IMG/VR virus record: IMGVR_UViG_3300042549_005931
Span: 124,001-188,000 of that record
Strand: one strand, 5' to 3'
Length of the DNA: 64,000 nt
The translations under genes and the position numbers were made by a program. Below are positions 5,042 through 63,665 of this stretch, piece after piece. Each line of letters begins with the position of its first letter. Position 1 is the stretch's first letter. The notes beneath the pieces were generated by a model. The model did not search any database. It saw only the letters and a list, made by a program, of their open reading frames with translations, and was not told the origin of the DNA.

Positions 5042-5081
5042 AACATTTTTATTATAAATATCTGTAATTAGTTAATATTCA

Positions 5082-8000
5082 CTATTCCATTTGAAAATAA
5101 ACCACATCTCCATCACCAACATCTAATTTCTTTGCCAATTGGTTAGATATTGCAACACCGTAACCCGTAATATTTGGTCCAATATTGATAGGTCCACTTA
5201 CTTGTGCCGGTGTAATGACGTTTTGATTACCAATTGCCGGTATATTAACTTTCTTTTCCAAATTTTTCGGATTAAAGAACGTAATGTTAGATGAAAGTAT
5301 ATGATTACCTGCCGGAGTATATTGAATATTAGGTAAATCAAATCTTAATGAATAATAATATGCGTTTGGTACAACTTTTTTTACTTCACGCCAAACAATA
5401 GCATTACCCGTATCACCAGTTACTACAATGTTTTTCGTGTAACTATAGATGTTCATTTTATCTTCAGATTCGATTTTGTATTTATCATCATTCATTTTAA
5501 CAGCAATGGCTCTAAAATATTCAACACCATTAAGTGTAACCTTCTGTATGTATTTCTCACCATTATATCCGTTGAATCTAACACCATATTGATTAACACC
5601 AGCCTCATTTACCAACTGTTCTCCATTAATAATATTCTTGGAATCTCCCTTATCAATTGTTAAATTACCTTGAGGTGTATTAATAGTTGTTTCATTGGCT
5701 TTCGGTCCTTTAATCATATTATCAGCCTCATTTTGTCTCGCCTGTGCCCTTTCTGTGATTTTATCAAATAATACACGGTAACTTGCCATGAACGAATCTT
5801 TTGGATTTGGTAATGATGCATAAGGTATTCTTGTACCCTTAAATGAGGTAGATATGATGTTACTTTTATTAATATTGTGTGTTACCTCAGTAATCCAATA
5901 TGTACCCCTAAACATTGGTACATTTTTTAAATAAAAATACATTGTAGGTTGTATCATCACATTACCTAAACAAGTAACGTCACATGTATATGATACACTT
6001 CTATAGATATCAAATAAACTTGTATCTATTTGTTGTGCGCCGGCACCATTTTCTGAACGACCTAAATTTTCAAGTACCGCAAATGATTCTGTGGTATTTT
6101 TTACTGAGGACTGGTCTAAGCTTACACTTTTAAAAATATTTTGATTTTGGTCACCCACACTAACTTCAAAAGCAACAACCTTATTTGATTTGGTCATATC
6201 ACTATTACTAAAAATACCCGGTATCGTTACAATTAATGGATTGTTATTAGCATCACCAATATCAAAACTATCATCACGGAATAAGTTTTTATCACTTATA
6301 TCTCTCATTTCAAGATGTTTAGATGTTGGACCAGAATATTGTACAACCATTTTAGGTGATGACTCCTCGTAATCAACATCTAAGAATGTACCAAATAAAT
6401 TATTGGCAGTCTTTTTAGAAGCATTTACCTTGCCTTTACTTTGATAGTTATTTCCGTAGAAATTAACATATGCCGGCATAGCCCTCATGTCAAATCCGGT
6501 ATCTTGAATTAACATTGATATTACACCATATAAGTTTTGTTTACTGTTGTTGACGTTTTCTAATGTCAATAATTTATCTAATGAAAGATATGCTTGATTA
6601 CCAATATATTTGTTAGCCTTATCTAAGAACATAAATTCTTCAATTAGTAATCTTTGTCCTAATGAATTACCGGCAACCCATTTATCATTAAATGATTTAA
6701 AGAAATTATATAATTCAAGTTTTAACGTTGTTTCATTATAACCCCTATCATATGTTAATGTCTGTGTGAATGTTTTTGGTTTTAACGTACCGAGTTTTGC
6801 GGTTAATGTAGCTAAAAACAATTCGTGTCTAACACTAGCACCATTTATGTCGGTTGTACTTGTGAAAACATTATCTCTAATATATTTTTGAAATTCTGAT
6901 TTGGTTAATGTGTTACCCATTTTAGCGTATCCCGCAAATATGTGAATCAATGTTCTAAATGTTAATATATTTTCCTCATTTAACTCAACGTCATTTGTAA
7001 TAAAGAATTCTTTATAGTAATCATCGTTTAAATCGGGATTACCACCAACATATAATTTTAATAGTTTTTGATTTTCGGTAGTATATTGAGACTCATTATA
7101 AGGATTAACCTTAAATGTTGTATTGTTATTCAACGCACTTAATCCCGACCAAGCGTATAAATCAATTTCTTTTGGGTTACCAATTGTAATCTTTAATAGA
7201 TTATTATCATTGATTATTTCTTGAGTTATTGTTTTTAATTTTTCAACTTGCTTTGTCTTTAATAATTTAATATATGTGTCATAGTTTGCGGTATCTGAAA
7301 TAACGACAGGGATAGTAGTCATTTCTTTTAATAAGGAAATGAAATTGTCATGTTTTATATTACTATAAACCTTTAATGGAATTTGTTCACCACTTTTATC
7401 TGATGCAAAGTCTAAAAATAACTTTTCAAACTCATCTAATATATTTGGATTAAATGTCGCAATAAGGTCATAGATTTCTCTATTAATATTAGTTATTAAA
7501 TATTGATTATCTAAGTTTCTGTTTGTTGGGTTGTATGATAAATTATATTCTTGAAAATTTGGGAATGGTAATGAATCATAGTCATCATTTAACTGAGTAT
7601 CTTCCCAAATAATACGGAAATTACTTTGTCTTGCCGACGCTACACTATTGTTTTTTAAATTAGTGGCACTATTAAAACCGTCACTAGGTAATAATGTGGT
7701 AAATTCATCAGTTAATTTTAAATCTTTATTATTTACAAATGCAGTCCAATATCTATTATTATTTACCACCTTTGACCTATAATATAATCCACCAAGTGTT
7801 GTTCCACTAGTGAATCCGGTGAGGGTATCATTGAATGTGTCATATCCGTTTATTATTTTATTATAAACAGATTGATAGTAAGGATGAAACCCACAATCAA
7901 AAGTTCCATTATAATTTATGTATTTTGTTGATAAATTATTATAATCATATGTTGGATATGTATTATCTGCCCCATTTTTATCATAATAACTTAGACCATT

Positions 8001-10850
8001 TATTGCTGTGGTTATGTTTTCATTCAAAAATCCATCTAATATATCAATTGGTGCACCTAAACCATCTTCTTGTGTTAAATAAGTTTTATATCTATGATAT
8101 AACGAACCCCATTTTAAAATCAAATGATATGGGATATGATGTGACGCACCAATTTCTTTTAAGGTTGTAGCAATTAGTGGACGACCTGAACCACCGGCCC
8201 ACTTATCAGATAAATCTCTAAATGGTAATGAATTTAATAACAAGTATGCAGAACCGGCATACTTTCCGTATGGACTTGTTTTTTTATAATCTTCAAAAAG
8301 TTGTTTATGAAAGTATGGTGTGTTTAAAATGTTTTCACTTGTATTATTTACCTTTAACTTTTGTGAAAATATGTTTTCACGCCAAGAACCATCAAGATTA
8401 TCTTTAATCCAAAATGTTGAACCTTTTGGATATGAAACAACAAGACCTTCGGTTGTATTAACACTTAATATACCATCAAACTTAAAATTATCTTTTAGTA
8501 ATTGTGGTTGATTAAGATATAAAAGATATTCATCGGAATTAAATGGATAGATACCCATTCTATATTCTTCAATTTTATAATTTAAAATATTGTCCGCTAA
8601 TTTTGTGTATTTATTATCGGTATCAACATTTTTAGTTGCTCCACTATATTGTTCTATTTTAAATGGACTATTTAAAAATTCGTTAATATATGGTGTAGTT
8701 GGTAGACTGTCTTGATAATACGGATATCTTTCAAAAGGTGATGTTGTTTTAAGTTTTTCTCTTAATTTATCTGTTGTGTTTACACCTTTTAATATACTAA
8801 TAACATCAAAATCTTCCTCAAGTACTTTTTGTAAAATTTCAAATTCAATATTAGCCAACTCTTTAATTGATTCGTTGTTAAATGAATCAACCAATGTTGC
8901 ATATTTTGAACGTTCCCATATTTCGTAAACAAGTGACGTGATATCTTTTGAAATATATGGTTGATAATTCATCCATTGGAATAGTGTAGAAATTTTTGGT
9001 ATATCTACATTTTTTTCATCATTAGCAAACACATAACTTATATTTCCAACACCACCCTCTTTTTCAGTGTTTGTGTCTAACTTTTTACTTGCAACTGCAT
9101 AATAATTTTCAAGAAAATCAATTTCGGGCCATAATCTTGGATTATTTGATTCTAATTTTTTTTCTAAATCTGGGTCACGAGGATATGCTAATATTTTTTG
9201 TTGTGATGTTGAAACTTTTTTAATTTCAGGCCACGGATAAATTGGTTTACCTTTTGTTTCATCACTTAAATTACCAATCTTTTTTGCTCTCTCCTCACCA
9301 ACCTCAAATGATTTTCTATGTGTATCTTTAAATAAACGAATATAAACATCGGCGTTAGCCATGATTACCGCAAAGATGTTCTGTATTGTAGGTTCAAAAC
9401 CAATACCCTTATCTTTATCTCGGATAATCTTATTCATTTCTTCTTCAATATTTTGAATAACCTTATTACGTTGTTTAACAAATGTATTACTTATCTCATA
9501 AATGTCTTTTAATATTTCATTTTTTGCTATACCATATATACCATTACTATCATCTTGATATGATTTATAATCTTTTATTTTAGTCGCCAAACTAATTTCT
9601 AACGCATTTTTGTCAAAATTTGCCCTTTGGTCCGCTTTTATTGTATCAAGAAGAACTTTTGAATTAGCCAATCTTCCAATATTTTGTCTAATAATATAAT
9701 CTAATGTACCACTACTGTTTTGGTCTGAATTATATACATTTTTTAAACTATTATTCTCTGATGTTGCTAATTTAAAATAATCAACACCATTTTTCACAAA
9801 GAAGTCATTTGATAATCGTACAGAAGACCATGACTTAATTTGTTCCTCAAATGTTGTGATACTTGTTTCAAATTCTTTAATACCTGAAAGAATTCTAAAA
9901 TCTACTTTTTGGTCAAATATTTCCCTTTCTAATATTTTATCTAATGAAGACGCAATAGTGATTATCTCTCTAAGAGTTCTTGGTCTTACATTAAAATCTT
10001 TCGGTAAAAAACCTTTTTGTATATATTCATCATATACCGCCTTCAATAAAACAAATCCTTTTGATGTTTTACTAATACTTTTTTCTACTCTATTTGTTTT
10101 TGGATTAAACTTACCTTTCTTATCTGTTTCTGATAAAAACATATAAGGAGCGTTTAAAATACCCTCTAAAGGTATGTCACTTAAAAAAGCGTATGTTGAG
10201 CCAACAAATGATGTTGCAATTTCAAAATTACCATTTTCGGTAAATTTTGATGTAAACTTAGTCATGTGTAACCTATAACGAATTGCCTTACCATAATAAC
10301 CTTTAACGGTTAAATAAAATATTGGCCATGGTAAATGAAAAAATGCTTTATATGGGGAATTTTCAGGTGATTCAAATAATGTCTTACCTCTAACATCAAC
10401 AAAGTTGATATTGATTTGTGGAATAAATCCACCACCCTTTATATTAATAACGATACTTTCAATACCAAAAGATTGTGCGGTGTCATCGCTTTGATAAAAT
10501 TCACCCGTTCCGACCATGTTACCATTTTTATCTTTAACCATCTTTTCACGGTTATCAAAAAATGAATCAGTCCAAGTAGAATCGTAATCCGAACCACCAT
10601 TCTTTTTCATGAAATTAAGTGTTCCTTGAGCAACTGATGTTAATGAACTTTTTTCGTCATTTGAAATTAATGTAGTTCTTGGAATTAAATCTGCCTCCAA
10701 GTTTACATACGTTACTAAATTTTCTTGTTTAACGCCCCTTGGTTGAATTTGTCCATCAACAACAGTACTATTTGGGTCAACATAAATTAAATTATTTTGG
10801 TCAACCTTTATTAAAATGTCCTCATGTTCATTAGTGTTACTGTTCTCCAT
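5082..10850 (-). CDS. very large baseplate hub protein (gp27/VgrG/late-control-D-like)
   Basis: C-proximal TCDVTCLGNVMIQPTMYFYL...GTYWITEVTHNI..STSFKG pattern typical of hub proteins; follows the tape measure, tube initiator and wedge genes. Confidence 0.65.
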   Translation of the reverse strand: MENSNTNEHEDILIKVDQNNLIYVDPNSTVVDGQIQPRGVKQENLVTYVNLEADLIPRTTLISNDEKSSLTSVAQGTLNFMKKNGGSDYDSTWTDSFFDNREKMVKDKNGNMVGTGEFYQSDDTAQSFGIESIVINIKGGGFIPQININFVDVRGKTLFESPENSPYKAFFHLPWPIFYLTVKGYYGKAIRYRLHMTKFTSKFTENGNFEIATSFVGSTYAFLSDIPLEGILNAPYMFLSETDKKGKFNPKTNRVEKSISKTSKGFVLLKAVYDEYIQKGFLPKDFNVRPRTLREIITIASSLDKILEREIFDQKVDFRILSGIKEFETSITTFEEQIKSWSSVRLSNDFFVKNGVDYFKLATSENNSLKNVYNSDQNSSGTLDYIIRQNIGRLANSKVLLDTIKADQRANFDKNALEISLATKIKDYKSYQDDSNGIYGIAKNEILKDIYEISNTFVKQRNKVIQNIEEEMNKIIRDKDKGIGFEPTIQNIFAVIMANADVYIRLFKDTHRKSFEVGEERAKKIGNLSDETKGKPIYPWPEIKKVSTSQQKILAYPRDPDLEKKLESNNPRLWPEIDFLENYYAVASKKLDTNTEKEGGVGNISYVFANDEKNVDIPKISTLFQWMNYQPYISKDITSLVYEIWERSKYATLVDSFNNESIKELANIEFEILQKVLEEDFDVISILKGVNTTDKLREKLKTTSPFERYPYYQDSLPTTPYINEFLNSPFKIEQYSGATKNVDTDNKYTKLADNILNYKIEEYRMGIYPFNSDEYLLYLNQPQLLKDNFKFDGILSVNTTEGLVVSYPKGSTFWIKDNLDGSWRENIFSQKLKVNNTSENILNTPYFHKQLFEDYKKTSPYGKYAGSAYLLLNSLPFRDLSDKWAGGSGRPLIATTLKEIGASHHIPYHLILKWGSLYHRYKTYLTQEDGLGAPIDILDGFLNENITTAINGLSYYDKNGADNTYPTYDYNNLSTKYINYNGTFDCGFHPYYQSVYNKIINGYDTFNDTLTGFTSGTTLGGLYYRSKVVNNNRYWTAFVNNKDLKLTDEFTTLLPSDGFNSATNLKNNSVASARQSNFRIIWEDTQLNDDYDSLPFPNFQEYNLSYNPTNRNLDNQYLITNINREIYDLIATFNPNILDEFEKLFLDFASDKSGEQIPLKVYSNIKHDNFISLLKEMTTIPVVISDTANYDTYIKLLKTKQVEKLKTITQEIINDNNLLKITIGNPKEIDLYAWSGLSALNNNTTFKVNPYNESQYTTENQKLLKLYVGGNPDLNDDYYKEFFITNDVELNEENILTFRTLIHIFAGYAKMGNTLTKSEFQKYIRDNVFTSTTDINGASVRHELFLATLTAKLGTLKPKTFTQTLTYDRGYNETTLKLELYNFFKSFNDKWVAGNSLGQRLLIEEFMFLDKANKYIGNQAYLSLDKLLTLENVNNSKQNLYGVISMLIQDTGFDMRAMPAYVNFYGNNYQSKGKVNASKKTANNLFGTFLDVDYEESSPKMVVQYSGPTSKHLEMRDISDKNLFRDDSFDIGDANNNPLIVTIPGIFSNSDMTKSNKVVAFEVSVGDQNQNIFKSVSLDQSSVKNTTESFAVLENLGRSENGAGAQQIDTSLFDIYRSVSYTCDVTCLGNVMIQPTMYFYLKNVPMFRGTYWITEVTHNINKSNIISTSFKGTRIPYASLPNPKDSFMASYRVLFDKITERAQARQNEADNMIKGPKANETTINTPQGNLTIDKGDSKNIINGEQLVNEAGVNQYGVRFNGYNGEKYIQKVTLNGVEYFRAIAVKMNDDKYKIESEDKMNIYSYTKNIVVTGDTGNAIVWREVKKVVPNAYYYSLRFDLPNIQYTPAGNHILSSNITFFNPKNLEKKVNIPAIGNQNVITPAQVSGPINIGPNITGYGVAISNQLAKKLDVGDGDVVYFQME

Positions 10851-11163
10851 AGTATAATTTATACAACTCTATTCCTCTTTTATAATCTTGTAGAGAGGTT
10901 GTTAATGGAAATGGAATTCTAATATACGCATTGTCCGGTATTTCAAATTCAAGACTACTGACAGTAGGATTTGCTTGTAATATTAACCAACCATACAAAG
11001 GTGAACCATAAAATTCTTCTGAAATCTTATCTAATCTATCTTTTCCATTTTTATATTGGTGATATTTGTCCGTACCCTTTATTGGTAATTCAATACCCGG
11101 TACAATTTTAAATTCACCATCAACTAAAAAATCCACATACCTATTGTAATATTGTCTACTCAT
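10837..11163 (-). CDS. baseplate wedge protein, gp53/LysM-like
   Basis: DRLDKISEEFYGSPLYGWLILQANP...IRIP is the gp53/tail-X LysM-like signature. Confidence 0.82.
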   Translation of the reverse strand: MSRQYYNRYVDFLVDGEFKIVPGIELPIKGTDKYHQYKNGKDRLDKISEEFYGSPLYGWLILQANPTVSSLEFEIPDNAYIRIPFPLTTSLQDYKRGIELYKLYYGEQ

Positions 11164-14100
11164 TTCTTATAATAGTTTAAGGTGGTACCTAATTTATTTT
11201 GTGCACTCATTATTTTAGTTAAAACCTCAGTATCATATCCCACTTCATTTGTTGGTGTACCGTATGAATATTCAACTTTTTTGTTTACATCATATGTTGG
11301 TACTTTACTATATTTAAATTTCACAGGACTCGGTGTTTCAATAAATTTTTTAAGTTTATCGTCAATTTTACTTATTATTTTATCTGTAAAATTTTTAGAG
11401 TCATTTTTATACAAATCAACAATATTTTTCTTCTCTCCTTGTAAGAATACAGATAATATTTCTTTTAATGTAGCCGTATCTATAGATGATGGATTAAATC
11501 CACTTGATAAGGTATCAACCTTACCACTTAATTTTGTATGATTATCTTTTATGAAATTAATTATTGGACTATATTCTTTATAAAAATTAGTACTACTAAA
11601 TTCACTTACGTTTAAATATAACTCCGTAAATAATTCACCCTCAATTTTACCATCAGACCCATATTGTGTTATAAAGTTCAAACTATCTAATGTTGACGTA
11701 ACGGATTGTCTATATTTTTCCAAATTTTTAATGGATTCCTTATTCATCATACCATCAATGTAACCTTCAACAAACTTAATCATATAAGGTTGTAATATTT
11801 TTTCAGAAGTTGAGCGTAATGATGATGGTATAACACCACTTAAATTTAAAATATCCGTTAAATCATTAGTGTTTATTGCGGTTACCATACCGGTTTTTAA
11901 TCCTCTTGTTTGATTTGATAAATCATCGGATACTTTATATTCACCAAGTAATTCTATCGTTTCATCCGCACCATCTGTTTTTACCGTAAACGTATTTATT
12001 TTTCTATATGTGTTTGAGAAAAATAAACTTACCGGTTTTTCACCGTATAATTTTAATAACTCATTATACGTTTTGTCATATAAATCAAAATATGCCTTGG
12101 TTCCTTCAAACGCCGGGTATATTAAAGATGGATTATAAGATAATTTTTCCCCTTGATTACCAATATATTTACCTTGAATATTTGTAATAGCACCGGCAGA
12201 ATCCGCCTCACTTTTAGGTTTAGTATTTGAAGGTAGATTAAGTCCATCTAAAAATTCTTTTGTGTATTCATCTACCGATTTACCATTAATTTTTGAAGTT
12301 ATGGTTGCTCTTTCATCATACATCTCAGTATTTGCATAGAAGTTTGAACTTAAAGCATTTTGTAATCTATCGACAGGTGCCTCTAAACCTTGTCCACCAA
12401 TAAACGCAATTTGTAATGACACATTTGCAATCATTGGTTGTACTCCAATACCTTCAGGATTTAAATCCCATACGTTATCGTCAAATGTTATATTAACATC
12501 CCTAATAATAATTTTTGAGTGATAAAAATCTCCAACTCTCATAACACAGATTGGTGGTGGACCAAATGATGTATTTCTTGCACCAATATCAAGACTATCT
12601 GAAATACCTTTAACAGGTATAGTATCACCCGGTCTTACACATTGTAATAAGAACGTTAGTCTACTATTCAATCCTTCAGGTGTCATTGAGTGAAATGCCG
12701 GATGGAAATACTTAATCTTCTCACTTAACGACTTAAACGCTAATGGTGAGTCATCTTCTAACTTCTTAAAGTAATAACACTCAGATAACATCTTCATGAT
12801 GATTCTTTGCATCACATTAATGGTTGGTTTTTTAGGTGCCGTACCTGGAATTGTATCATCATATTCCTCCATTAATGTTGTAACCGTTGTAATCGGGTCG
12901 GATACAGTTTCCTTTTGTTTTTGTGGTAATGGGGTATATTCAAGTTTAGCCGTTGCCTGTCTACAGAAAAATGCAATAGGTGCAGTAACTTTTAAACCTT
13001 TTTTAGTTGTAATCTTTTGTTTACAATTTATATTACCTTGTTCACCGGTTGGATTAGAAATATCACTATTTTCACCGTTTGTTGTGAATTTAATATTTAA
13101 TTTACCATCTTTTGCAAATCCTAAATCTTTGAAACTAAACTCTATTGGTAACGAAAATGAACCCGCTAAACCAACCAATTTCTTTACACCATCCGGTGTT
13201 ATCCATTTTTTGTTTAGAATTTCATCACTTGAGGTTCCCATTAAAACGTTTAGAAAATGTTTTAAAATACTGTTACCTCTTCTTACACCTAATAATAGGT
13301 TATAATTGTCGTCAGCAACTTCCGATGTTGCGGTTGTTATTGTTAAAGTAGCGGCATTTACTTCCCCACTTTCAATTTTAGTTTTTAAATCACTAATTTT
13401 AGTATTTAACTCACCAAATGTGGTATCCATAGTTGTGAATCCACCTGTTACAGATGTGGTTTGTCCACTAATTATTTCGTTTTTCTTAGTTGTTAAAGCA
13501 CCACCGGTTAAACCTTTTAATGGATATGGTGATTTAAAAATAACACCTCTATCATGTTCACCAGTTTTACCACTTAATGGACCAATAAGTAATTCATTTA
13601 AATCCTCAACCAATAATTTTATATACGAATCTTTTTTATTTTTATAATCGGTATATGTGTCGGCATATGTTTGACTAGCAACCGTATCACTTGACCCAAC
13701 TTTAGGGAAATCGTTTCGGAAATATAATTTTGCATTATAATTTACCGGTTCTCCACCTTTTGGTGGTGGTAATTGTGTTATAGGTACACCGGGGGTTGTT
13801 ATGGTTGTTGTAATTGGTCTCCATTTTTTAATGGTTACAGGGTCAGGATTATCACCTGAATTAAGATATGTCTGAATTAATATAGCATCCTCAATATCAA
13901 TAGTGATATAAGTTTTTAATAACTCATATAAATCTAAATCTTTACAACCAGCAAAGAAAGCATTGATATAATTGTCGGCTTCAGCTTCACTCATATCCTT
14001 GAATAAGTCTTGTGACATTAAATTCATAATACTTGGGTGGTCAACAATTACTTTAAATGAAACTTGACCACTTCTTGATGTGTTTTGATATGTGTAAATT

Positions 14101-15977: not shown

Positions 15978-16067
15978 TTATTTATATTTTATAATAAATA
16001 GATGAATATTATTTTCCTTTTCTTTTGTTCGGAGTTAAATTAACAAATCCTTTGGTATTTTTATGTG

Positions 16068-18002: not shown

Positions 18003-18022
18003 ACATATAAATAGAAGAGTTA

Positions 18023-19506: not shown

Positions 19507-19626
19507 TTTGTATTTGTTAAATTTTTCTTTATTTTACTCTTATAAATATATAATATTTAAAAAAGTCATTTATTTTCTATTAATTATTTGACTTTGTCGT
19601 TTTTTTTGTTTAGTTTTTTACAAACA

Positions 19627-19739
19627 CCCAGTATTACTAGTTCCAGTATAACTTAATTTCTTTTATTTTACTAGAAAATTATTAATAATAAAGCTTATTA
19701 ATATAAATACTAGTATTACTAGTTCCAGTTTATACTGGG
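19627..19739. repeat. intergenic direct and inverted repeat element
   Basis: AGTATTACTAGTTCCAGT at 19630-19647 and 19712-19729; terminal inverted CCCAGTAT/ATACTGGG; central TATTAATAA/TTATTAATA. Confidence 0.85.
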
Positions 19740-22715: not shown

Positions 22716-22759
22716 TGATTAATGTTTGGTTAAAATTTTTTTATTAGTTTTATTATAAA

Positions 22760-22839
22760 TATCTTTGTTTTTACCAAAGATTTCGATACTTTTCACATAA
22801 AAGATAGTAAATTATCTTTTTCTATCTTTATTTATCTTT
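22760..22839. promoter_or_regulatory. TATCTTT operator-like array between the divergent sheath and RHH genes
   Basis: TATCTTT at 22760, 22813, 22823 and 22833; inverted copies at 22776-22781 and 22800-22806. Confidence 0.6.
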
Positions 22840-24760: not shown

Positions 24761-24810
24761 ATCCTTATAAATAGTAGATTTTTACGAACTTATTATTTAT
24801 ATTATAAATT

Positions 24811-26761: not shown

Positions 26762-26798
26762 ATCTTAAATATAAAGTATTTATAAGAATAAATCAATT

Positions 26799-30874: not shown

Positions 30875-30889
30875 TTACAAATATAAATA
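30875..30889 (-). promoter_or_regulatory. composite promoter TATTTATATTTGTAA upstream of DNA polymerase
   Basis: Overlapping TATTTATA and TATATTTG; the same 15-mer occurs upstream of bS21. Confidence 0.6.
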
Positions 30890-30904
30890 CAAAATATTAA
30901 TTTA

Positions 30905-32085: not shown

Positions 32086-32098
32086 TTAGATAAATAGT

Positions 32099-33211: not shown

Positions 33212-33264
33212 ATTTTAATAAATATCTTTCATTTGGTTTGATATTTATATAAAAAATATATCTA

Positions 33265-38716: not shown

Positions 38717-38756
38717 TATTTATCTACATAATAAACTTATTATAAATTAGGAAACT

Positions 38757-41501: not shown

Positions 41502-42280
41502 AAAATATAACAGTTATTTTACCCATCCATAGATTAGATGGTAACTATAAAGAAATGTTTAGCAACGCAATTGAATCTTTAAAAGATTTCCATAATGACG
41601 TTAAACTATCTATCGTATGTCCAAACGATGTCAATATTACCCAAGAATTAAGTTCCATTACAAGTAATTTAGAAATTAATACTTTAACACATAATGGTCC
41701 TACCGATTTTTGTTCCCAAATTAATTATGGTGTTGAAAATTGTGATACAGAATGGTTTTCAATTTTAGAAATTGATGATGTTTATAAACCGATATGGTTA
41801 AAGTCAATGAATGAATATGTAAACATTTATCCAGATGTTTCAGTGTTCTTACCAATTGTAAAAGATATTAATGAAGAAGGTAAGTTTGTTAGTTTCACTA
41901 ACGAATCTACATGGGCTTACGGATTTAGTGAAAGACAAGGATTTTTAGATAATGAAGTATTGTTAGATTTCCAAAACTATCAAACAAGTGGTGGTCTTTA
42001 TAAAACACAAGTTATTAAAGATAATGGTTTATTTAAGGACAATATCAAATTAACTTTTAGTTACGAGTTCTTATTACGTTTAACACATAATGGTGTTGCG
42101 ATTATGACAGTACCTAAAATCGGATATCAACACGTAAATTTTAGAGAAGATTCATTATTTTGGAGTTATCAAAATGAAGGTACTAAACTATCTGAAAAAG
42201 AAGCTAAGTTTTGGTTGGAAACTTCTAAGAAAGAATTTTTCTTTAAGAATAAACGTGAGATTGAATATGTAGAAGCTTAA
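41498..42280 (+). CDS. glycosyltransferase family 2 (GT-A fold)
   Basis: ITVILPIH, INYGV...DTEWFSILEIDD, YEFLLRL. Confidence 0.85.
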   Translation: MKNITVILPIHRLDGNYKEMFSNAIESLKDFHNDVKLSIVCPNDVNITQELSSITSNLEINTLTHNGPTDFCSQINYGVENCDTEWFSILEIDDVYKPIWLKSMNEYVNIYPDVSVFLPIVKDINEEGKFVSFTNESTWAYGFSERQGFLDNEVLLDFQNYQTSGGLYKTQVIKDNGLFKDNIKLTFSYEFLLRLTHNGVAIMTVPKIGYQHVNFREDSLFWSYQNEGTKLSEKEAKFWLETSKKEFFFKNKREIEYVEA

Positions 42281-42978
42281 TGCCAAGAAAAAGAACCCAA
42301 AAGATATACTTTGGGGAGGAACAAGAACAAGCGGTAGTACGATATTTAGAATCCGATTCCGATATAGAAAGAAACAAGATATTCAATGAATATTTAAGAG
42401 ACCCCCTCGTTATAATGGTTGAATCAATTATTCGACGTTATAAATTATATAGAAAAGACTTAGAATTTGAAGACATACATTCAGATACTATGTCTTTTCT
42501 TATTACCAAAATTAATAAGTTTGACCACACTAAAAACCATAAGGCATATTCTTACTTTGGAACTATTTGTAAGAATTACCTTATGGGTGCCATACAAAAA
42601 GATACCAAAGAAACTAATCGTAGTGTGTCTTATGATGATATTTCATCTGACATCGAGGATAGGGCCGATTTATCTTATGTTATCGATGAGTACGTAATTG
42701 ACTATAGAGATGTTATCATTAAATTGACAATGTCTTTAGAAGAATTTATGGAAAGTGAACAACTAACGGATAATGAACAAAAATTAGGATACGCTTTACT
42801 TGAAATCTTTAGTAATTTTGATAAAATTTTTCAAGTTGGTGACGGAAATAAATTTAACAAAAATCTTATTTTATTGTCATTGAGAGAAATGACATCACTA
42901 TCCACTAAGGAAATTAGAATATCCTTAAAAAGATTTAAAAGAATGTATGACGGTATTTTAGGTGGATTTTTAGAATAA
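42280..42978 (+). CDS. phage RNA polymerase sigma factor (T4 gp55-like late sigma)
   Basis: Region 2-like EDIHSD...LITKINKFD..K.HKAYSYFGTICKNYL. Confidence 0.75.
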   Translation: MPRKRTQKIYFGEEQEQAVVRYLESDSDIERNKIFNEYLRDPLVIMVESIIRRYKLYRKDLEFEDIHSDTMSFLITKINKFDHTKNHKAYSYFGTICKNYLMGAIQKDTKETNRSVSYDDISSDIEDRADLSYVIDEYVIDYRDVIIKLTMSLEEFMESEQLTDNEQKLGYALLEIFSNFDKIFQVGDGNKFNKNLILLSLREMTSLSTKEIRISLKRFKRMYDGILGGFLE

Positions 42979-42992
42979 ATCTATTTATTACT

Positions 42993-46993: not shown

Positions 46994-47015
46994 TTGATAT
47001 TTATAATATAAAAAG

Positions 47016-48395: not shown

Positions 48396-48409
48396 AAATA
48401 TTTATTAAT

Positions 48410-53456: not shown

Positions 53457-53537
53457 TTTTTTGTTTTATTATCTTATAAATACTATGGTTTTATTAAAAA
53501 ATCTCTTTTAACGGGGTCATAAACAAAATAAAATCTA

Positions 53538-54221: not shown

Positions 54222-54256
54222 TTATAGTTTTTACTATAAATACATCGATAATTAAG

Positions 54257-54755: not shown

Positions 54756-54770
54756 TATTTATATTTGTAA
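54756..54770 (+). promoter_or_regulatory. composite promoter TATTTATATTTGTAA upstream of bS21
   Basis: TATTTATA 54756-54763 overlapping TATATTTG 54760-54767. Confidence 0.6.
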
Positions 54771-54787: not shown

Positions 54788-54976
54788 ATGTTAATTGTTG
54801 ATTTAAGTAAAGAAAAAAGTATTGAGAGTGCTTTGAGAACTTTTAAGGGTAAAGTTTTAAAAACTAAGCTTGTTCAAAAATTAAGAGAAAGACAAGAGTT
54901 CACAAAACCCTCAGTTACTAAGAGAAAACAGAAATTGAAAGCTGTTTATCTACAGAAAAAAAATGGTCTTGATTAA
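54788..54976 (+). CDS. rpsU: ribosomal protein bS21 (phage-encoded)
   Basis: IESALRTFK.KV.KT......RERQEFTKPSVTKR...KAVY, Bacteroidota-type bS21. Confidence 0.93.
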   Translation: MLIVDLSKEKSIESALRTFKGKVLKTKLVQKLRERQEFTKPSVTKRKQKLKAVYLQKKNGLD

Positions 54977-55712: not shown

Positions 55713-57527
55713 TTAGTCGTTTAATATGTCTGTTATTTTAGTTTCTATTTCATAAATATTCTGTTGTGCTTTATTCATATCAAATAAGATATTAAAATCT
55801 TCTTTTTCCTCACCTAACATACCTAATATTTTTGATTTTCTTGAAGTAGATTCACTTAATGGTTCCGCAGCAGGTGCTTCGGCAGGTGCTCCACCACCCA
55901 TATCCATTCCACCACCGGCAGCAGCTTCACCACCACCTGCGGCAGCTTCAGCCTTTTCTCTTTCTTCCTCAGGGATACCATACTTAGCATCCACATTGTC
56001 GAAGATACCTGAACGTTTAATGATTAACTGACTCGTATTCATTAATTCGAAACCAACCGCTCTTTCAAGACGTTGTTGTTGTAAATCAAGTAATACTTCA
56101 GCATCACTCATACCAAGAATATTTTTCTTAGCCCATGTATGAGACACCGGTAAAATACCCATTTGAGATTGGTCAGATGTTGCATCCTTATAAAGAGTAA
56201 CCTTTTCTTTCCATTGTTCAATACGTAATAAATCAGATTGTGCTGATGGATTAGTTAAACCTAACGTAAAGTTATTTAATTCATCCTCTAAACCTAATAG
56301 ATACAAGTGAACTAATGCTATTTTATTTAACTCTTGAATAACTGATTTTTGAATTCTGTTAATTGTACGAGCAAAACGAATATCCATTAATGCTAAACTC
56401 TTACCTTCACCAACAACCTCTTCAAAACCTAAGAAAGCTTTTGGTATACGTAAAGCTGCAAGTAGTTTCTTTTGAATATATTCAATATCGGCAATTTCAC
56501 CTAAGTTTGTTGCTCCGGGTAATGTATCGATTGGACTTGGAGCTGCAGGGTCACGTACAGGGATAAAATAATCTTGGTCTACTGACATTTGATTATATCT
56601 CATATCTACCTGACCATTACGTGGGTCGGATATTTGGTCTCTTTTGAATTTACTTGCCACACGTTGTACATAAGCTTCAATATCTTTATCATCCATGTTA
56701 CCCACAAATATTTTAAAGATACGTCTTTCAGGTGCTCTTGATGTTCTATAAATTAACATCGCATCTTCAGCAAGAAGTAATTGTTTCCAAATACGTCTAA
56801 TCTTATCTAACATAGAAGTACCATAAGGTAATTTTCTATCGTCACCTAAAATTCTAAAGTGTGCAACTTCCCAAGCTTGGAATTCCATATCTTTATTCTT
56901 CCAATGGAATCTCAATTCACGTGACGGCATTTTAACATCTCTAGCTTGTCCCGCAGTTTTACTTGATGCGCCTTCCAATCTTTCAATTTCAATGTTTGGT
57001 AATTGTTGACACCCAATGATACCCTTTTCAGGGTCAATTTTTAAGTATACAAAGTTATCCCCATACTTACATAGACCTCTTGTCCACATTTGTAAGTTGG
57101 TGTTAACATCTAATACGTTTTTGAATAAGTCATCAAGGATATTCTTTACTCTTGTTGATTCAGAAAATATTGTTAATATTTCACCCTTCTCAGACATTGT
57201 GGTTGATTCTTCAGCATAGATATCTAAAGCTGCGGAAATCTCCGGAGTAAATTCCATAGATTCATAATCATAATATGCAGCCAATCTATTTGGTTCGTAA
57301 TAAACCGATTGGTTATATAATGATTGGTCAAGTTTAGCCCATTTATCAGCAATGTACTGACTTTGTTGAGCTTGTAATAACGCCTTTTCGTATTCTTCTC
57401 TACTATCGGTCTTTAATAATTCGTCTTTTGAGAAACTAAATGATGGTACTTGGTCGGGTCTTGTTTTCCCCGGATATCCAAACATCTTGGTCAATTTCTG
57501 AAAAACTGTAAAATTCTGTTCTGCCAT
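55713..57527 (-). CDS. portal protein (T4 gp20-like)
   Basis: PEISAALDIYAEE, EDAMLIYRTSRAPERRIFKI.VGN, DYFIPVR, IDTLPG, ALRIPK. Confidence 0.96.
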   Translation of the reverse strand: MAEQNFTVFQKLTKMFGYPGKTRPDQVPSFSFSKDELLKTDSREEYEKALLQAQQSQYIADKWAKLDQSLYNQSVYYEPNRLAAYYDYESMEFTPEISAALDIYAEESTTMSEKGEILTIFSESTRVKNILDDLFKNVLDVNTNLQMWTRGLCKYGDNFVYLKIDPEKGIIGCQQLPNIEIERLEGASSKTAGQARDVKMPSRELRFHWKNKDMEFQAWEVAHFRILGDDRKLPYGTSMLDKIRRIWKQLLLAEDAMLIYRTSRAPERRIFKIFVGNMDDKDIEAYVQRVASKFKRDQISDPRNGQVDMRYNQMSVDQDYFIPVRDPAAPSPIDTLPGATNLGEIADIEYIQKKLLAALRIPKAFLGFEEVVGEGKSLALMDIRFARTINRIQKSVIQELNKIALVHLYLLGLEDELNNFTLGLTNPSAQSDLLRIEQWKEKVTLYKDATSDQSQMGILPVSHTWAKKNILGMSDAEVLLDLQQQRLERAVGFELMNTSQLIIKRSGIFDNVDAKYGIPEEEREKAEAAAGGGEAAAGGGMDMGGGAPAEAPAAEPLSESTSRKSKILGMLGEEKEDFNILFDMNKAQQNIYEIETKITDILND

Positions 57528-57580
57528 TTATATAAATACTTTTTTTTATAATATAAACTAAATTATTAGTAATGGAAATA

Positions 57581-59365: not shown

Positions 59366-59369
59366 ATAG

Positions 59370-59377
59370 TATAAATA
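59370..59377 (-). promoter_or_regulatory. putative late promoter TATTTATA (one representative of about 20 copies)
   Basis: 4 nt before the TerL ATG and directly after a terminator; see findings for the other copies. Confidence 0.7.
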
Positions 59378-59378
59378 C

Positions 59379-59405
59379 AAAAAAAGGAGGTTAAACGCCT
59401 CCTTT
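59379..59405 (-). terminator. rho-independent terminator
   Basis: AAAGGAGG-N7-CCTCCTTT with a T tract on the minus strand. Confidence 0.8.
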
Positions 59406-59425
59406 ATTGTTTGTAGTCATAATGA

Positions 59426-60964: not shown

Positions 60965-60967
60965 TTT

Positions 60968-62388: not shown

Positions 62389-62391
62389 TGT

Positions 62392-63594
62392 TTACTTAAA
62401 ATATTTTGATAATGTTGTGTGAATATTATTGTTAATTTCGTTTTTAATTTCGTCTAAGTCGATTTCAACTTCATCTTCCATAATATCATCATCTTCCATT
62501 ATTTCTTCATCTTCCATTATTTCTTCATCTTCCATAGATTCTTCCCCACTTAAACTTGGTGATACGTAATCTGGTTTGAAATCAAACATACTATCATCAA
62601 TAGCTTCTTCATCTAAGTCAGCGTAATCATTGATGTTAAATTCGTACATTTCTTCTTCATTATCTAATCCTGATAAATCTTCCTCGTTAAAGTCTGTATA
62701 TTCTTCATCAATTGATGAATTAATAAAACTTTCTAAAGCGTCCATTGGATTTGATTCTTCACCTAATTCTTCATCAGCTGCGACAGGCTCTTCTGCAGGT
62801 AATTCCTCACCGCCAAGTTCTTCACCCCCAAAATTATCTTCTCCACCCTCAACTGCTCCTTGTTCTTCATCTCTTTCAAATTTTTCTGCAATGTCTTCGA
62901 TATCTTCATCGTCTAATTTGTCTAAATCAACTGCGGAAATAATCATATTAAGAATGTACTTAATATCATCACTTTCCATTTTATCTTTAATATCTCTTAA
63001 TTCTTGACCTAATCTACCAGCATGTTTTTGAGCTTCTGACATATAATCAGAACGTTTTCCTTCTGAAGGTGCTTCTTCTTCACCACCCATGTCTTCACCA
63101 CCTTCCACAGGAGGTAATTCAGGTAATGGTTCTTCACCTGCAGGAGACTCACCACCCTCTGCCGGTGGCATTGGAGGTAATGCCTCATCCGCAACTGGTT
63201 CTTCAGGCATTGCAGGTACAGGTGCTGGTGCTTCAGCTTGTGCTGGCTTATCAGTTTTTAAAACATATTTTGTAGCTTCGTTAATTAACTCTTCTTGACC
63301 TTTAATTAATTCAAGACGTTTAACCGCTTCAGCATATGATGAAAACTTATTTTTGTTCTTCATGAACATTCCTCCGATATAGTCAAGAGAATTTTCATTC
63401 AATCCTCTCTTTACATAGTATCCGTCTTTTTCTTTAACGACACCATATACACCACCTGTCTTAGATTCTGCTACAACCTCAGCTTTCGATGTATTTTTTT
63501 TATTATCGGTTTTGTAGTATGCCAATTCAAGGATTCTTTTTAATTTGTCATCCCCATTGAGCTTCTCACTACCAAGTGGTTTTAAATCTGCCAT
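62392..63594 (-). CDS. very acidic protein, putative prohead core protein (400 aa)
   Basis: KLKRILEL helix, LINE site, E/D/P-rich linkers; TATTTATA at 63629-63636. Confidence 0.65.
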   Translation of the reverse strand: MADLKPLGSEKLNGDDKLKRILELAYYKTDNKKNTSKAEVVAESKTGGVYGVVKEKDGYYVKRGLNENSLDYIGGMFMKNKNKFSSYAEAVKRLELIKGQEELINEATKYVLKTDKPAQAEAPAPVPAMPEEPVADEALPPMPPAEGGESPAGEEPLPELPPVEGGEDMGGEEEAPSEGKRSDYMSEAQKHAGRLGQELRDIKDKMESDDIKYILNMIISAVDLDKLDDEDIEDIAEKFERDEEQGAVEGGEDNFGGEELGGEELPAEEPVAADEELGEESNPMDALESFINSSIDEEYTDFNEEDLSGLDNEEEMYEFNINDYADLDEEAIDDSMFDFKPDYVSPSLSGEESMEDEEIMEDEEIMEDDDIMEDEVEIDLDEIKNEINNNIHTTLSKYFK

Positions 63595-63665
63595 TTTGTA
63601 TATAAATTAGATTAACTTATTCTTATCCTATAAATACATTGTAATACGGAAAAAAATAAGGTTCT

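What the first reader, a model, noticed from the sequence alone, without database searches (positions are those of the whole stretch)
5053..63636. Late promoter candidate TATTTAT(A/T/C), the reverse complement of the T4 TATAAATA box
Seen on the coding strand upstream of genes of both orientations. Minus-strand genes: 5053, 15993, 18006, 19541, 22754, 24766, 32089, 33217, 53475, 54235, 57531, 59370, 63629. Plus-strand genes: 22829, 24794, 26777, 33242, 38717, 42982, 46998, 48399, 54756. These are mostly structural and packaging genes, and the orientation follows the gene. Known: T4 gp55 recognises a lone TATAAATA element. Inference: the gp55-like sigma at 42280 has a distinct specificity. A naive scan for TATAAATA would assign these sites to the wrong strand.
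Basis: partly seen in the sequence, partly recalled or inferred. Interest (0 to 1): 0.68.

Follow-up and report, generated by a model that had tools for sequence, protein, structure and literature searches.

The report
TATTTATA late-promoter box of jumbo phage
A strictly conserved 7-8 base box, TATTTAT(A/T), sits on the coding strand just upstream of the head, tail, packaging and lysis operons of this uncultured freshwater jumbo phage and its relatives; it is most likely the late promoter read by the phage's own T4-gp55-like sigma factor, and it differs from the classic T4 late promoter TATAAATA at two central bases.

Summary
All 22 listed sites exist. The word is not over-represented by count (35 in the window, 42 expected), but its placement and strand are far from random. 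In the whole 269-kb genome, 80 of 162 TATTTAT copies lie 40 nt or less upstream of an ATG-started ORF on the same strand. Same-composition control words average 12.5% (p about 5e-30), and the reverse orientation gives 25 of 162.

The box has these properties:
- It is the top de novo upstream word.
- It tolerates no core mismatch.
- It has no -35 partner.
- It heads operons, follows terminators, and stands back to back in two 50-nt divergent gaps.
- It is kept exactly in dozens of relatives while its flanks drift.

It precedes sheath, tube, portal, terminase, prohead protease, baseplate and endolysin genes. The same test recovers TATAAATA in T4.

The cultured Flavobacterium phage immuto shares the gp55-like sigma (28% identity) and the box, but lacks the second, sigma-70-like sigma of this genome.

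Best reading: a T4-type lone -10-like late promoter with altered specificity. It differs from TATAAATA only at positions 4-5; the reverse-complement relation is incidental. About a third of sites lie only 3-6 nt from the ATG, which predicts leaderless late mRNAs. No RNA data exist, so start sites, timing and sigma dependence remain inferred.

The parts
42280..42978 (+). gp55-like sigma factor gene (232 aa). It has no TATTTAT box of its own, and its ATG overlaps the stop of the upstream glycosyltransferase gene.
   Evidence: Pfam Sigma70_r2, 24.4 bits. phrog_234 'late sigma', E 1.8e-4. T4 gp55 is the best PDB sequence hit, E 1.2e-3, and the only profile hit, E 2.2e-3. hhalign versus T4 gp55: E 5.6e-5, 114 columns. 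AF2 model residues 9-109 match gp55 chain 7d7d_F at Z 10.9, rmsd 2.5, rank 2 of 48,161. Reciprocal phmmer hit with T4 gp55.
5053..5060 (-). TATTTATA, 11 nt before the ATG of a 67-aa ORF (4838-5041) that heads a minus-strand gene string
15993..16000 (-). TATTTATT, 15 nt before the ATG of the 1605-aa ORF (11160-15977)
18006..18013 (-). TATTTATA, 3 nt before the ATG of the 644-aa ORF (16068-18002); short-spacer class
19541..19548 (-). TATTTATA, 34 nt before the ATG of the tail tube gene (19018-19506)
   Evidence: Immuto has the box 22 nt (7-mer to ATG) before its tube gene.
19702..19709 (-).
22754..22761 (-). TATTTATA, 38 nt before the ATG of the tail sheath gene (19788-22715)
   Evidence: Immuto has the box 26 nt (7-mer to ATG) before its sheath gene.
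22829..22836 (+). TATTTATC, 4 nt before the ATG of a 52-aa ORF (22841-22999), divergent from the sheath promoter
24766..24773 (-). TATTTATA, 5 nt before the ATG of the 170-aa ORF (24248-24760); one of two outward-facing boxes in a 50-nt divergent gap
24794..24801 (+). TATTTATA, 9 nt before the ATG of the helicase gene (24811-26562); partner box in the same 50-nt divergent gap
26777..26784 (+). TATTTATA, 14 nt before the ATG of the head-tail adaptor-like gene (26799-27923)
30882..30889 (-). TATTTATA, 64 nt before the DNA polymerase ATG (30817). It overlaps a host-type TTTG-N20-TATATTTG promoter, so this copy may be incidental.
32089..32096 (-). TATTTATC, 3 nt before the ATG of the 270-aa ORF (31273-32085); short-spacer class
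33217..33224 (-). TATTTATT, 5 nt before the ATG of the 370-aa ORF (32099-33211); one of two boxes in a 53-nt divergent gap
   Evidence: Exact box kept in 25/25 distinct upstream sequences of relatives.
33242..33249 (+). TATTTATA, 15 nt before the ATG of the 257-aa ORF (33265-34038) that heads a four-gene overlapping string
   Evidence: Kept in 25/25 relatives.
38717..38724 (+). TATTTATC, directly after the dUTPase stop and 32 nt before the TTG start of a PhoH-like gene (38757-39470)
   Evidence: Immuto phoH has TATTTATT with 24 nt between the 7-mer and the ATG.
42982..42989 (+). TATTTATT, 3 nt before the ATG of the 126-aa ORF (42993-43373), directly after the sigma gene; heads a four-gene string
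   Evidence: Exact box in 42/42 distinct upstream sequences of relatives; 7-mer-to-ATG spacing 4-6 in 39 of them. Immuto has a box 14 nt (7-mer to ATG) before the gene after its sigma.
46998..47005 (+). TATTTATA, 10 nt before the ATG of the 459-aa ORF (47016-48395)
   Evidence: Kept in 37/38 relatives; 7-mer-to-ATG spacing 11-15.
48399..48406 (+). TATTTATT, 3 nt before the ATG of the 170-aa ORF (48410-48922); short-spacer class
   Evidence: Kept in 12/14 relatives; 7-mer-to-ATG spacing 4-5.
53475..53482 (-). TATTTATA, 18 nt before the ATG of the 392-aa ORF (52278-53456). The major head protein gene (50517-52241) follows and has no box of its own.
   Evidence: The MCP upstream region lacks the box in 0/19 relatives.
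54235..54242 (-). TATTTATA, 13 nt before the ATG of the prohead protease gene (53538-54221)
54756..54763 (+). TATTTATA, 24 nt before the ATG of a 62-aa ORF (54788-54976)
57531..57538 (-). TATTTATA, 3 nt before the ATG of the portal gene (55713-57527); short-spacer class. The protein starts MAE, as in immuto.
59370..59377 (-). TATTTATA, 4 nt before the ATG (59365) of the large terminase gene, directly after a GC-rich hairpin plus T-run
   Evidence: Immuto TerL has the same terminator-box arrangement.
63629..63636 (-). TATTTATA, 34 nt before the ATG of the 400-aa ORF (62392-63594) that heads a four-gene string ending at 59426

Best explanation
TATTTAT(A/T) is the late-class promoter of this phage. 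It is a lone, extended -10-like element without a -35 partner. It is read on the non-template strand by host core RNA polymerase carrying the phage's gp55-like sigma (window 42280-42978). It works like the T4 late promoter TATAAATA but differs at the two central positions (AA to TT).

Shown here:
- The box is strand-specific, position-specific, strictly invariant and conserved in relatives.
- It heads operons.
- It precedes virion, packaging and lysis genes.
- A gp55-like sigma is present and co-occurs with the box in a distant cultured relative.

Inferred:
- RNA polymerase starts a few bases downstream of the box.
- Expression is late.

Also inferred: for the roughly one third of sites whose 8-mer ends 3-6 nt before the ATG, the transcript must begin at or within a few bases of the A of AUG. 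That would make these late mRNAs leaderless or nearly so. This fits a host that does not use Shine-Dalgarno sequences, probably a member of Bacteroidota.
For: Placement and strand:
- 80/162 copies lie upstream of ORFs against 12.5% for control words (p 5e-30). Sense versus antisense in co-directional gaps is 57:11.
- It is the top de novo 7-mer.

Strict core, no partner element:
- Every single-base variant of the first seven positions falls to 4-31% upstream, against 67% for TATTTATA.
- There is no -35 element: information is 0.16 bit or less at every position from -49 to 0.

Promoter-like context:
- Boxes occur at the first gene of overlapping gene strings, not at internal genes.
- 13 sites directly follow a strict hairpin plus T-run, 8% against 0-2.7% for control words.
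- Two divergent gaps of 50 and 53 nt each hold two outward-facing boxes.

Footprint in relatives:
- The exact box is kept in 42/42, 37/38, 12/14, 25/25 and 25/25 distinct upstream sequences of IMG/VR relatives, while flanking columns vary and downstream proteins are 36-98% identical.
- Genes without a box lack it in relatives too, 0/38 and 0/19.

Gene classes:
- Boxes precede sheath, tube, portal, TerL, prohead protease, adaptor, baseplate wedge, two virion proteins and endolysin.

Method control:
- The same test puts TATAAATA first in T4 (23/32).

Sigma:
- Flavobacterium phage immuto has the gp55-like sigma (28% identity) and the box before its TerL, portal, sheath, tube, hub and tail-fibre genes, and before the gene after its sigma. 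It has no homologue of this genome's second sigma.
- The orientation bias also holds in two further sigma clades: 27/61 against 7/61, and 103/255 against 42/255.

Structural rationale:
- T4 gp55 flips non-template A-12, A-9 and A-8 into pockets (PMC7892883).
- Here the bases equivalent to -12 and -8 are still A and the -12 pocket residue Y97 is invariant (Y92).
- The -9 base is T, and both -9 pocket residues differ: N13 to G/T and H95 to Y/F.

No phage RNA polymerase was detected.
Against: - There is no transcript data. No public RNA run holds this phage, so start sites, timing and sigma dependence are all untested.
- Sequence homology to gp55 is weak (E 1e-5 to 2e-3). The structural match of the N-terminal domain is tied with ordinary sigma region-2 domains (SigB Z 11.1, gp55 Z 10.9).
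- No homologue of the T4 co-activators gp33 and gp45, nor of a beta clamp, was found. The T4 activation mechanism is therefore not supported, although the record is only about 81% complete.
- Some boxes precede non-structural genes: a helicase, a RuvC-like resolvase, endonuclease V, an HNH endonuclease and a phosphoesterase. The class may be 'middle plus late'.
- Mel-JY01 has a homologous sigma but no genome-wide enrichment; only 4 of 10 late orthologues carry the box.
- With a 3-nt spacer, both T4 geometry (-13 to -6) and Flavobacterium sigma-A geometry (-12 to -5) would put the start inside the ATG. The start must therefore lie 1-2 nt closer than in either known system.
Confidence: 0.72

Rival explanations
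1. The box is a promoter but is read by a different factor. Candidates are the phage's second sigma, a canonical sigma-70-family protein with regions 2 and 4 at genome 80206-81015 (outside the window), or the host primary sigma, as a variant of the Bacteroidota -7 box.
For: - A second sigma gene exists: Sigma70_r2 59 bits and Sigma70_r4 41 bits.
- The box shares TA at positions 1-2 and T at positions 5 and 7 with the host consensus TAnnTTTG (PMC9723704).
- The homology of the 42280 product to gp55 is weak.
Against: - Immuto uses the same box but has no homologue of the second sigma.
- A sigma with region 4 would be expected to need a -35 element, and none is present.
- Host-type promoters of the form GTTATATTTGTAA, with an upstream TTTG, form a separate class concentrated at 253-268 kb and before the DNA polymerase gene.
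- The 7-mer tolerates no mismatch. This is typical of T4 late promoters and unlike the degenerate primary-sigma boxes.
Confidence: 0.14
2. The box acts at the RNA level and is not a promoter. It could be an AU-rich processing site that cuts polycistronic late transcripts just before each cistron, or a translation-initiation enhancer replacing the Shine-Dalgarno sequence in a host that lacks one.
For: - About a third of sites are only 3-6 nt from the ATG, with tight spacing kept in relatives. This is the distance expected of a translation signal.
- Only 5% of genes have an SD-like word.
- Many boxes lie between co-directional genes, where read-through RNA would contain them.
Against: - Spacing to the ATG ranges from 3 to about 40 nt in this phage and is mostly 10-26 nt in immuto. 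In Mel-JY01 the four boxes before late genes lie 22-45 nt upstream. This is too variable for a ribosome-positioning signal.
- Most genes, including internal genes of the same operons and the abundant major head protein gene, lack the box.
- Boxes directly follow terminators.
- Boxes occupy both sides of 50-nt divergent gaps, where no upstream transcript exists on that strand and promoters must lie.
Confidence: 0.1
3. The pattern is a by-product of AT-rich intergenic composition and has no function.
For: - The genome is 32% GC.
- The word is not enriched by count.
- All-A/T words are common before genes.
Against: - The 20 other words of identical composition show 6.5-22.6% upstream placement against 49%. 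In co-directional gaps, 14 of the 20 lean to the antisense strand.
- Single-base variants lose the effect.
- The box is exactly conserved in relatives while neighbouring A/T columns vary.
- The word is depleted inside genes.
Confidence: 0.01

Closest known systems
T4 late promoter TATAAATA, read by gp55 with gp33 and the gp45 sliding clamp (PMC2988020, PMC7892883, PMC1524935)
   Same: - Both are a lone 8-bp A/T-only -10-like element with no -35 partner.
- Both are near-invariant and lie on the coding strand before virion, packaging and lysis genes.
- In both, the phage encodes a small sigma with a region-2-like domain.
- Six of eight bases are identical, including the bases equivalent to the flipped A-12 and A-8.
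- The same upstream-placement test singles out each phage's box.
   Different: - Positions 4-5 are TT, not AA, so the box reads as the reverse complement of T4's.
- The eighth position accepts T as well as A.
- The minimum distance to the ATG is 3 nt here against 13 nt in T4.
- No gp33 or gp45 homologue was found.
- The sigma is 232 aa, with an extra C-terminal helical domain of unassigned fold.
- The probable host is Bacteroidota, which does not use Shine-Dalgarno sequences.
Known divergent late-promoter variants of T4-like phages: NATAAATA (S-PM2 and other cyanophages) and CTAAATA (Aeromonas phage Aeh1, which has a divergent gp55) (PMC2984593, PMC1524935)
   Same: They set a precedent that the late box drifts together with a diverged gp55.
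   Different: The published variants change the first one or two positions and keep the AAATA core. Here the central AA is replaced. No paper in the searchable library reports TATTTAT(A) as a phage promoter.
Bacteroidota primary-sigma promoter: TAnnTTTG at -12 to -5, with TTTG near -33 (PMC9723704, PMC7366714)
   Same: Both are A/T-rich 8-mers that start with TA and lie close to the start site. The phage appears to use genuine host-type boxes for its early-like genes and its DNA polymerase gene.
   Different: The terminal TTTG, the defining part of the host box, is ATA or ATT here. No upstream TTTG is present. The host box is degenerate, whereas this one is invariant.
Leaderless-mRNA promoters of Deinococcus and Mycobacterium, where a -10 box lies a fixed few bases before the start codon (PMC4007540, PMC4633059)
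   Same: For 29 of 83 sites the box ends 3-6 nt before an ATG, with spacing conserved in relatives. This is the arrangement that gives transcripts starting at the A of AUG.
   Different: - The leaderless state is only predicted here.
- It concerns a phage late regulon, not host genes.
- Flavobacterium hosts have only about 5.5% leaderless mRNAs (PMC9723704).

Membership tests
T4-type (gp55-dependent) late promoter | Lone -10-like element of about 8 bp, with no -35 element | tested here: met
   Information content is 0.16 bit or less at every position from -49 to 0 in 80 aligned sites. The 7-mer is invariant and position 8 is A or T.
T4-type (gp55-dependent) late promoter | Consensus TATAAATA on the non-template strand | tested here: not met
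   The coding-strand consensus is TATTTAT(A/T). TATAAATA faces an ORF at only 9/67 sites, against 45/67 for TATTTATA.
T4-type (gp55-dependent) late promoter | Located upstream of late (virion, packaging, lysis) genes | tested here: met
   Boxes precede sheath, tube, portal, TerL, protease, adaptor, baseplate wedge, virion protein and endolysin genes. They are absent before the gp41-like helicase, dUTPase, glycosyltransferase and sigma genes. Timing itself was not measured.
T4-type (gp55-dependent) late promoter | Box at -13 to -6 relative to the transcription start | not testable with these tools
   No RNA run holds this phage. The 3-4 nt spacers argue that the start lies closer than in T4 for a third of the sites.
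T4-type (gp55-dependent) late promoter | Activation through co-activator gp33 and sliding clamp gp45 | tested here: inconclusive
   There is no PF02916 (gp45) or PF00712 (beta clamp) match, and no phmmer hit from any T4 ORF other than the core genes listed. The record is about 81% complete, and gp33 is small and fast-evolving.
gp55 family of late sigma factors | Sigma region-2 homology domain that contacts the RNA polymerase clamp helices and the non-template -10-like strand | tested here: met
   Pfam Sigma70_r2 at the gathering threshold. AF2 residues 9-109 match gp55 (7d7d_F) at Z 10.9, rmsd 2.5 A, 96 residues, tied with SigB at Z 11.1.
gp55 family of late sigma factors | Specific sequence relationship to gp55 rather than to cellular sigmas | tested here: inconclusive
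   gp55 is the best single-sequence PDB hit (E 1.2e-3) and the only profile hit (E 2.2e-3). hhalign gives E 5.6e-5 but only 66% probability. phrog_234 matches at E 1.8e-4. There are reciprocal phmmer hits with T4. The results are consistent but weak.
gp55 family of late sigma factors | No region 4 (no -35 reading domain) | tested here: inconclusive
   There is no Sigma70_r4 Pfam hit even at E 10. The C-terminal 95 residues, folded alone (pLDDT 76), give no clear match: best Z 6.1, and SigA region 4 only Z 4.7 at rank 43. The domain exists but its fold is unassigned.
gp55 family of late sigma factors | Pocket residues for the flipped bases A-12 (Y97), A-9 (N13, H95) and A-8 (T99) | tested here: inconclusive
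   From the alignment: Y97 maps to Y92 (invariant in both clades), F86 to F81 (invariant), H95 to Y/F, N13 to G/T, and T99 to G/Q. The pattern fits a change at -9, but it rests on a low-identity alignment.
Bacteroidota primary-sigma (-7 box) promoter | TAnnTTTG at -12 to -5, often with TTTG near -33 | tested here: not met
   Positions 6-8 are ATA or ATT, not TTG. Variants toward the host box lose the upstream placement: TATTTTTA gives 10/112. Host-type boxes form a separate set.
Leaderless mRNA | Primary 5' end at the A of the AUG start codon | not testable with these tools
   This is only predicted from the 3-6 nt spacing at 29 of 83 sites and its conservation in relatives.

The most novel reading that the evidence does not exclude
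The box drives a largely leaderless late regulon. For about a third of the late transcription units, including portal, terminase and several virion genes, RNA polymerase carrying a gp55-like sigma would start at or next to the A of AUG. This would be 1-2 nt closer to the -10-like element than in T4 or in the Flavobacterium host. One 8-bp element would then fix both transcription start and translation start in a host without Shine-Dalgarno sequences. The sigma would also work without gp33 or a gp45 clamp, perhaps through its extra C-terminal domain. That would make this very abundant aquatic family (thousands of homologues) a distinct branch of late-transcription machinery.
Probability: 0.35. 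Interest if true: 0.78.

Novelty: new variant of a known kind. Interest (0 to 1): 0.6.

Why it matters
T4 late transcription is the textbook case of a minimal promoter read by a minimal sigma. The late boxes found in the literature searched here (T4 and KVP40, S-PM2 and other cyanophages, Aeh1) all keep the AAATA core.

Here the central AA is TT. A cultured relative (Flavobacterium phage immuto) and well over a hundred uncultured aquatic phage contigs share both the box and the sigma. The sigma family has about 8,000 database relatives for each of two clades.

This gives a natural specificity variant for testing how the gp55 pockets read the non-template strand. The residues that hold A-9 in T4 are the ones that differ here.

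It has a practical use for annotation. Scanning these phages for TATAAATA marks the wrong strand, while TATTTAT(A/T) predicts late operon heads.

It also raises a testable prediction of leaderless late mRNAs in Bacteroidota phages. Transcription in Bacteroidota phages remains little studied, and immuto on its Flavobacterium host offers an experimental system.

Tried and rejected
- RNA evidence: the look-up of sequencing runs returned only DNA metagenome runs from lakes and fresh water, with no RNA holder. Read laying was therefore not used, since contigs cannot show starts.
- Near-identity search against named phages found nothing.
- Literature: no paper links TATTTAT(A) to a phage promoter, and none describes promoters of immuto or Mel-JY01.
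- A -35 partner was sought and none found.
- Mel-JY01 was first taken as a negative control because it shows no genome-wide enrichment. It turned out to be ambiguous: 4 of 10 late orthologues carry the box 22-45 nt upstream, with SD-like words in between. It is reported as weak support only.
- Global enrichment of the host box TAnnTTTG upstream of genes is weak (24% against 15-22% for controls). Only the longer form GTTATATTTG(T) clusters clearly, in the 253-268 kb region.
- Sigma region 4 in the C-terminal domain is not supported.
- gp45, beta clamp and gp33 were not found.
- No phage-encoded RNA polymerase was found with PF00940, PF00562 or PF00623. The PF00940 control rang nowhere, so that search is uninformative.
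- Foldseek of the whole sigma model gave only weak E-values, although every top hit is a sigma factor.
- No alternative genetic code was needed.

Full report
**What the window is.** The window is bases 124,001-188,000 of a single 269,133-bp viral contig (32% GC, about 81% complete by CheckV). Near-identical DNA occurs in many lake and freshwater metagenomes but in no RNA run. It is a distant T4-like jumbo myophage.
- PHROG matches identify tail sheath, tail tube, baseplate hub, portal, large terminase, prohead protease and major head protein.
- T4 ORFs for gp17, 18, 19, 20, 21, 23, 25, 41 and 55 find single counterparts.
- The nearest named relatives are Flavobacterium phage vB_FspM_immuto and Microcystis phage Mel-JY01.

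The host is probably a member of Bacteroidota.
- Only 5% of genes have an SD-like word upstream. The figures are 6% in immuto, 36% in Mel-JY01 and 65% in T4.
- Host-type boxes of the form GTTATATTTGTAA, some with an upstream TTTG, stand about 20 nt before small genes at 253-268 kb and before the DNA polymerase gene.

**The observation.** All 22 coordinates are exact matches on the stated strand. By count the word is not enriched (35 against 42 +/- 7). Genome-wide it is the rarest of the 21 words made of five T and two A (162 against 203-395). What is non-random is where it lies.
- 80 of 162 copies are 40 nt or less upstream of an ATG that opens an ORF of at least 50 aa on the same strand. Control words average 12.5% (maximum 22.6%), and the same sites read on the other strand give 25 (p 5e-30, 9e-14 and 7e-11).
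- In co-directional intergenic DNA, 57 copies are sense and 11 antisense (p 1.3e-8). Of the 20 control words, 14 lean the other way.
- Density is 4.4 per kb outside genes and 0.31 per kb inside.
- An unbiased scan of upstream regions puts TATTTAT first among 7-mers (10.3x), and its extensions first among 8-mers.
- As a method control, the same ranking puts TATAAATA first in T4 (23/32). Here TATTTATA (45/67) comes second of 11,121 words, behind only CTATTTAT, an overlapping form of the same box.

**Anatomy of the box.**
- The 7-mer core tolerates no change. Every single-base variant of positions 1-7 drops to 4-31% upstream placement.
- Position 8 is A (67% of such copies lie upstream) or T (44%), and more rarely G or C.
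- The base before the box is rarely T.
- No other position from -49 to +12 carries more than 0.3 bit, so there is no -35 element.

**Why it is a promoter.**
1. It marks the first gene of gene strings and is absent from the tightly packed internal genes. Examples are 33265 followed by three overlapping genes, 42993 followed by three, and 63594 followed by three.
2. Thirteen copies directly follow a strict GC-rich hairpin plus T-run, 8% against 0-2.7% for control words. The terminase gene shows this in both this phage and immuto.
3. The divergent gaps 24761-24810 (50 nt) and 33212-33264 (53 nt) each contain two outward-facing boxes and little else. Two promoters must lie there, and no upstream transcript can supply an RNA-level signal.
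4. Across 80 IMG/VR relatives whose sigma is 80-90% identical, the exact 7-mer is kept in 42/42, 37/38, 12/14, 25/25 and 25/25 distinct upstream sequences at five junctions. Flanking columns and the spacer vary, and downstream proteins are 36-98% identical. Two genes without a box lack it in all relatives, 0/38 and 0/19.

**Gene classes.** Genes directly behind a box include sheath, tube, portal, terminase, prohead protease, the 392-aa gene followed by the major head protein gene, an adaptor-like gene, baseplate wedge, two virion structural proteins and an endolysin. A few are enzymes: a helicase, a RuvC-like resolvase, endonuclease V, an HNH endonuclease, a phosphoesterase and PhoH. The gp41-like helicase, dUTPase, glycosyltransferase and sigma genes have none. 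The DNA polymerase gene has one copy 64 nt upstream, but it overlaps a full host-type promoter. 'Late' is therefore a reasonable label, but it rests on gene content only.

**Which factor reads it.** The 42280-42978 product is a sigma region-2 protein.
- Pfam Sigma70_r2 matches at threshold, and PHROG 'late sigma' at E 1.8e-4.
- T4 gp55 is the best PDB sequence hit (E 1.2e-3) and the only profile hit (E 2.2e-3). hhalign gives E 5.6e-5 over 114 columns.
- The AlphaFold model (pLDDT 69) superposes on gp55 at Z 10.9 over 96 residues. This is rank 2 of 48,161 chains, tied with cellular sigma-2 domains.
- Its C-terminal 95 residues form a helical domain with no assignable fold and no region-4 signal.

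The genome also encodes, outside the window at 80206-81015, a canonical sigma with regions 2 and 4. Immuto decides between them. It has the gp55-like sigma (28% identity) and the box before its TerL, portal, sheath, tube, hub, tail-fibre and phoH genes, and before the gene after its sigma (TATTTATA 25/45 upstream against TATAAATA 8/45). It has no homologue of the second sigma. The orientation bias also holds around sigma genes of the immuto clade (27/61 against 7/61) and of a further clade whose sigma is 57-64% identical to the immuto-clade query P0137 (103/255 against 42/255). No phage RNA polymerase was detected.

**Relation to T4.** TATTTATA and TATAAATA are reverse complements, but they also differ at only two positions, 4 and 5. 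In T4 the box spans -13 to -6 (PMC1524935), and gp55 flips non-template A-12, A-9 and A-8 into pockets lined by Y97, by N13 and H95, and by T99 (PMC7892883).
- Mapped onto that frame, this box keeps A at -12 and -8 and has T at -10 and -9.
- In the alignment, Y97 is invariant (Y92).
- Both -9 pocket residues differ, N13 to G or T and H95 to Y or F. T99 becomes G or Q.

This is a coherent but unproven rationale for the changed specificity. Published variants (NATAAATA, CTAAATA) keep the AAATA core (PMC2984593, PMC1524935). No paper in the searchable library reports this box. No gp33, gp45 or beta-clamp homologue was found, so clamp-dependent activation cannot be assumed.

**The short-spacer class.** The distance from the end of the 8-mer to the ATG is 3 nt (12 sites), 4 nt (11), 5 nt (3) or 6 nt (3) at 29 of 83 sites, and 7-39 nt at all but two of the rest. 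The start codons are real: portal begins MAE in both this phage and immuto. The short spacing is kept in relatives. Measured from the 7-mer, it is 4-6 nt in 39 of 42 sequences at one junction and 4-5 nt in 12 of 12 at another.

In T4 the minimum is 13 nt. In Mel-JY01, whose genes use SD-like words, the four boxes before late genes lie 22-45 nt upstream. With T4 geometry the start would be the sixth base after the 8-mer. With Flavobacterium sigma-A geometry (-12 to -5; PMC9723704) it would be the fifth. With 3-4 nt spacers the A of ATG is the fourth or fifth base. These transcripts must therefore start at or just before the A, which makes them leaderless or nearly so. Only about 5.5% of Flavobacterium host mRNAs are leaderless (PMC9723704). 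This is an inference, and I rate it near even odds.

**Rivals.**
- Recognition by the second sigma or by host sigma A is disfavoured by immuto, by the missing -35 element and by the separate class of host-type boxes.
- An RNA-level role (processing site or translation enhancer) is disfavoured by the variable spacing across genes and phages, by absence from most genes, and by the terminator and divergent-gap contexts.
- A compositional artefact is excluded.

**Verdict.** It is a new specificity variant of a known kind of system, not a new kind. It gains interest from its breadth in aquatic phages, from the availability of a cultured model, and from the leaderless prediction.

Noticed in passing
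G000:C1:80206-81015 (minus strand; outside the window; L110:206-1015): A second phage-encoded sigma factor of 269 aa with canonical Sigma70_r2 (59 bits) and Sigma70_r4 (41 bits) domains. It is preceded by a TTATATTGTA box resembling the host-type -7 element. It has no homologue in immuto, Mel-JY01 or T4. It may direct a middle class of transcription; its promoter was not identified.
   Followed up: partly
G000:C1:254000-269133 (outside the window; L116, L117): There is a dense array of a short repeat, (A/G)TTTACCGGGA(T): 35 of the 43 genome copies of TTACC[GT]GG lie here, often paired with an inverted CC(C/T)GGTAA (54 of 59 copies). The repeats are interleaved with small plus-strand ORFs that carry host-type GTTATATTTGT(A/G) boxes about 20 nt before the ATG. 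The region looks like an early or host-takeover region with a repeated regulator-binding site. It touches the contig end.
   Followed up: partly
window 30882-30913, minus strand: The DNA polymerase gene (27920-30817) is preceded by a full Bacteroidota-type promoter, TTTG-N20-TATATTTG, which overlaps a TATTTATA copy. This could be a dual early/late arrangement of the kind described for some T4-like phages, or a coincidence.
   Followed up: partly
G000:C1:203660-215870 (L113:15660-19352, L114:163-7870): A cluster of 21 tRNA genes plus a tmRNA gene (tag peptide ending in ...NVAVA). Some TATTTAT boxes lie directly after tRNA 3' ends, for example at genome 210604.
   Followed up: no
window 5082-10850 and 11160-15977, minus strand: Two giant ORFs of 1922 and 1605 aa have no PHROG match. 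The second is preceded by a box, and the first follows through a 108-aa ORF, so they are probably late virion (tail-fibre or baseplate-like) proteins.
   Followed up: no
window 15979-16000: A near-palindrome in which TATTTATA on the plus strand (15979-15986) and TATTTATT on the minus strand (15993-16000) face each other across 6 nt. Only the minus copy faces a gene.
   Followed up: no
L081-L083 (Flavobacterium phage immuto) and L119-L134: Immuto and its clade carry a second, much longer conserved upstream element, about TATATTTAGGTATCAATAATTAA (for example TAGGTATC at 39 of 44 copies upstream of ORFs). It lies before many small genes and is a candidate early or middle promoter. It is absent from the window's genome.
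   Followed up: no
L085-L094 (Microcystis phage Mel-JY01): The words enriched upstream of genes differ here: AACAACCTAACAGGA-like and TATTAGAGAA-like. TATTTAT(A/T) is seen only before the tube, portal, TerL and endolysin genes, at 22-45 nt, with SD-like GGAG in between.
   Followed up: partly
window 38757-39470, plus strand: A PhoH-like ATPase gene (Walker A GPAGVGKS) appears to start with TTG. No in-frame ATG lies near the 5' end.
   Followed up: no
window 42280 (sigma start) and the sigma C-terminus: The sigma ATG overlaps the stop of the upstream family-2 glycosyltransferase gene, so sigma is co-transcribed with non-late genes. Its C-terminus ends in a hydrophobic GILGGFLE (AGFSIQ in the immuto clade), which loosely recalls C-terminal clamp-binding tails. 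This was not tested.
   Followed up: no
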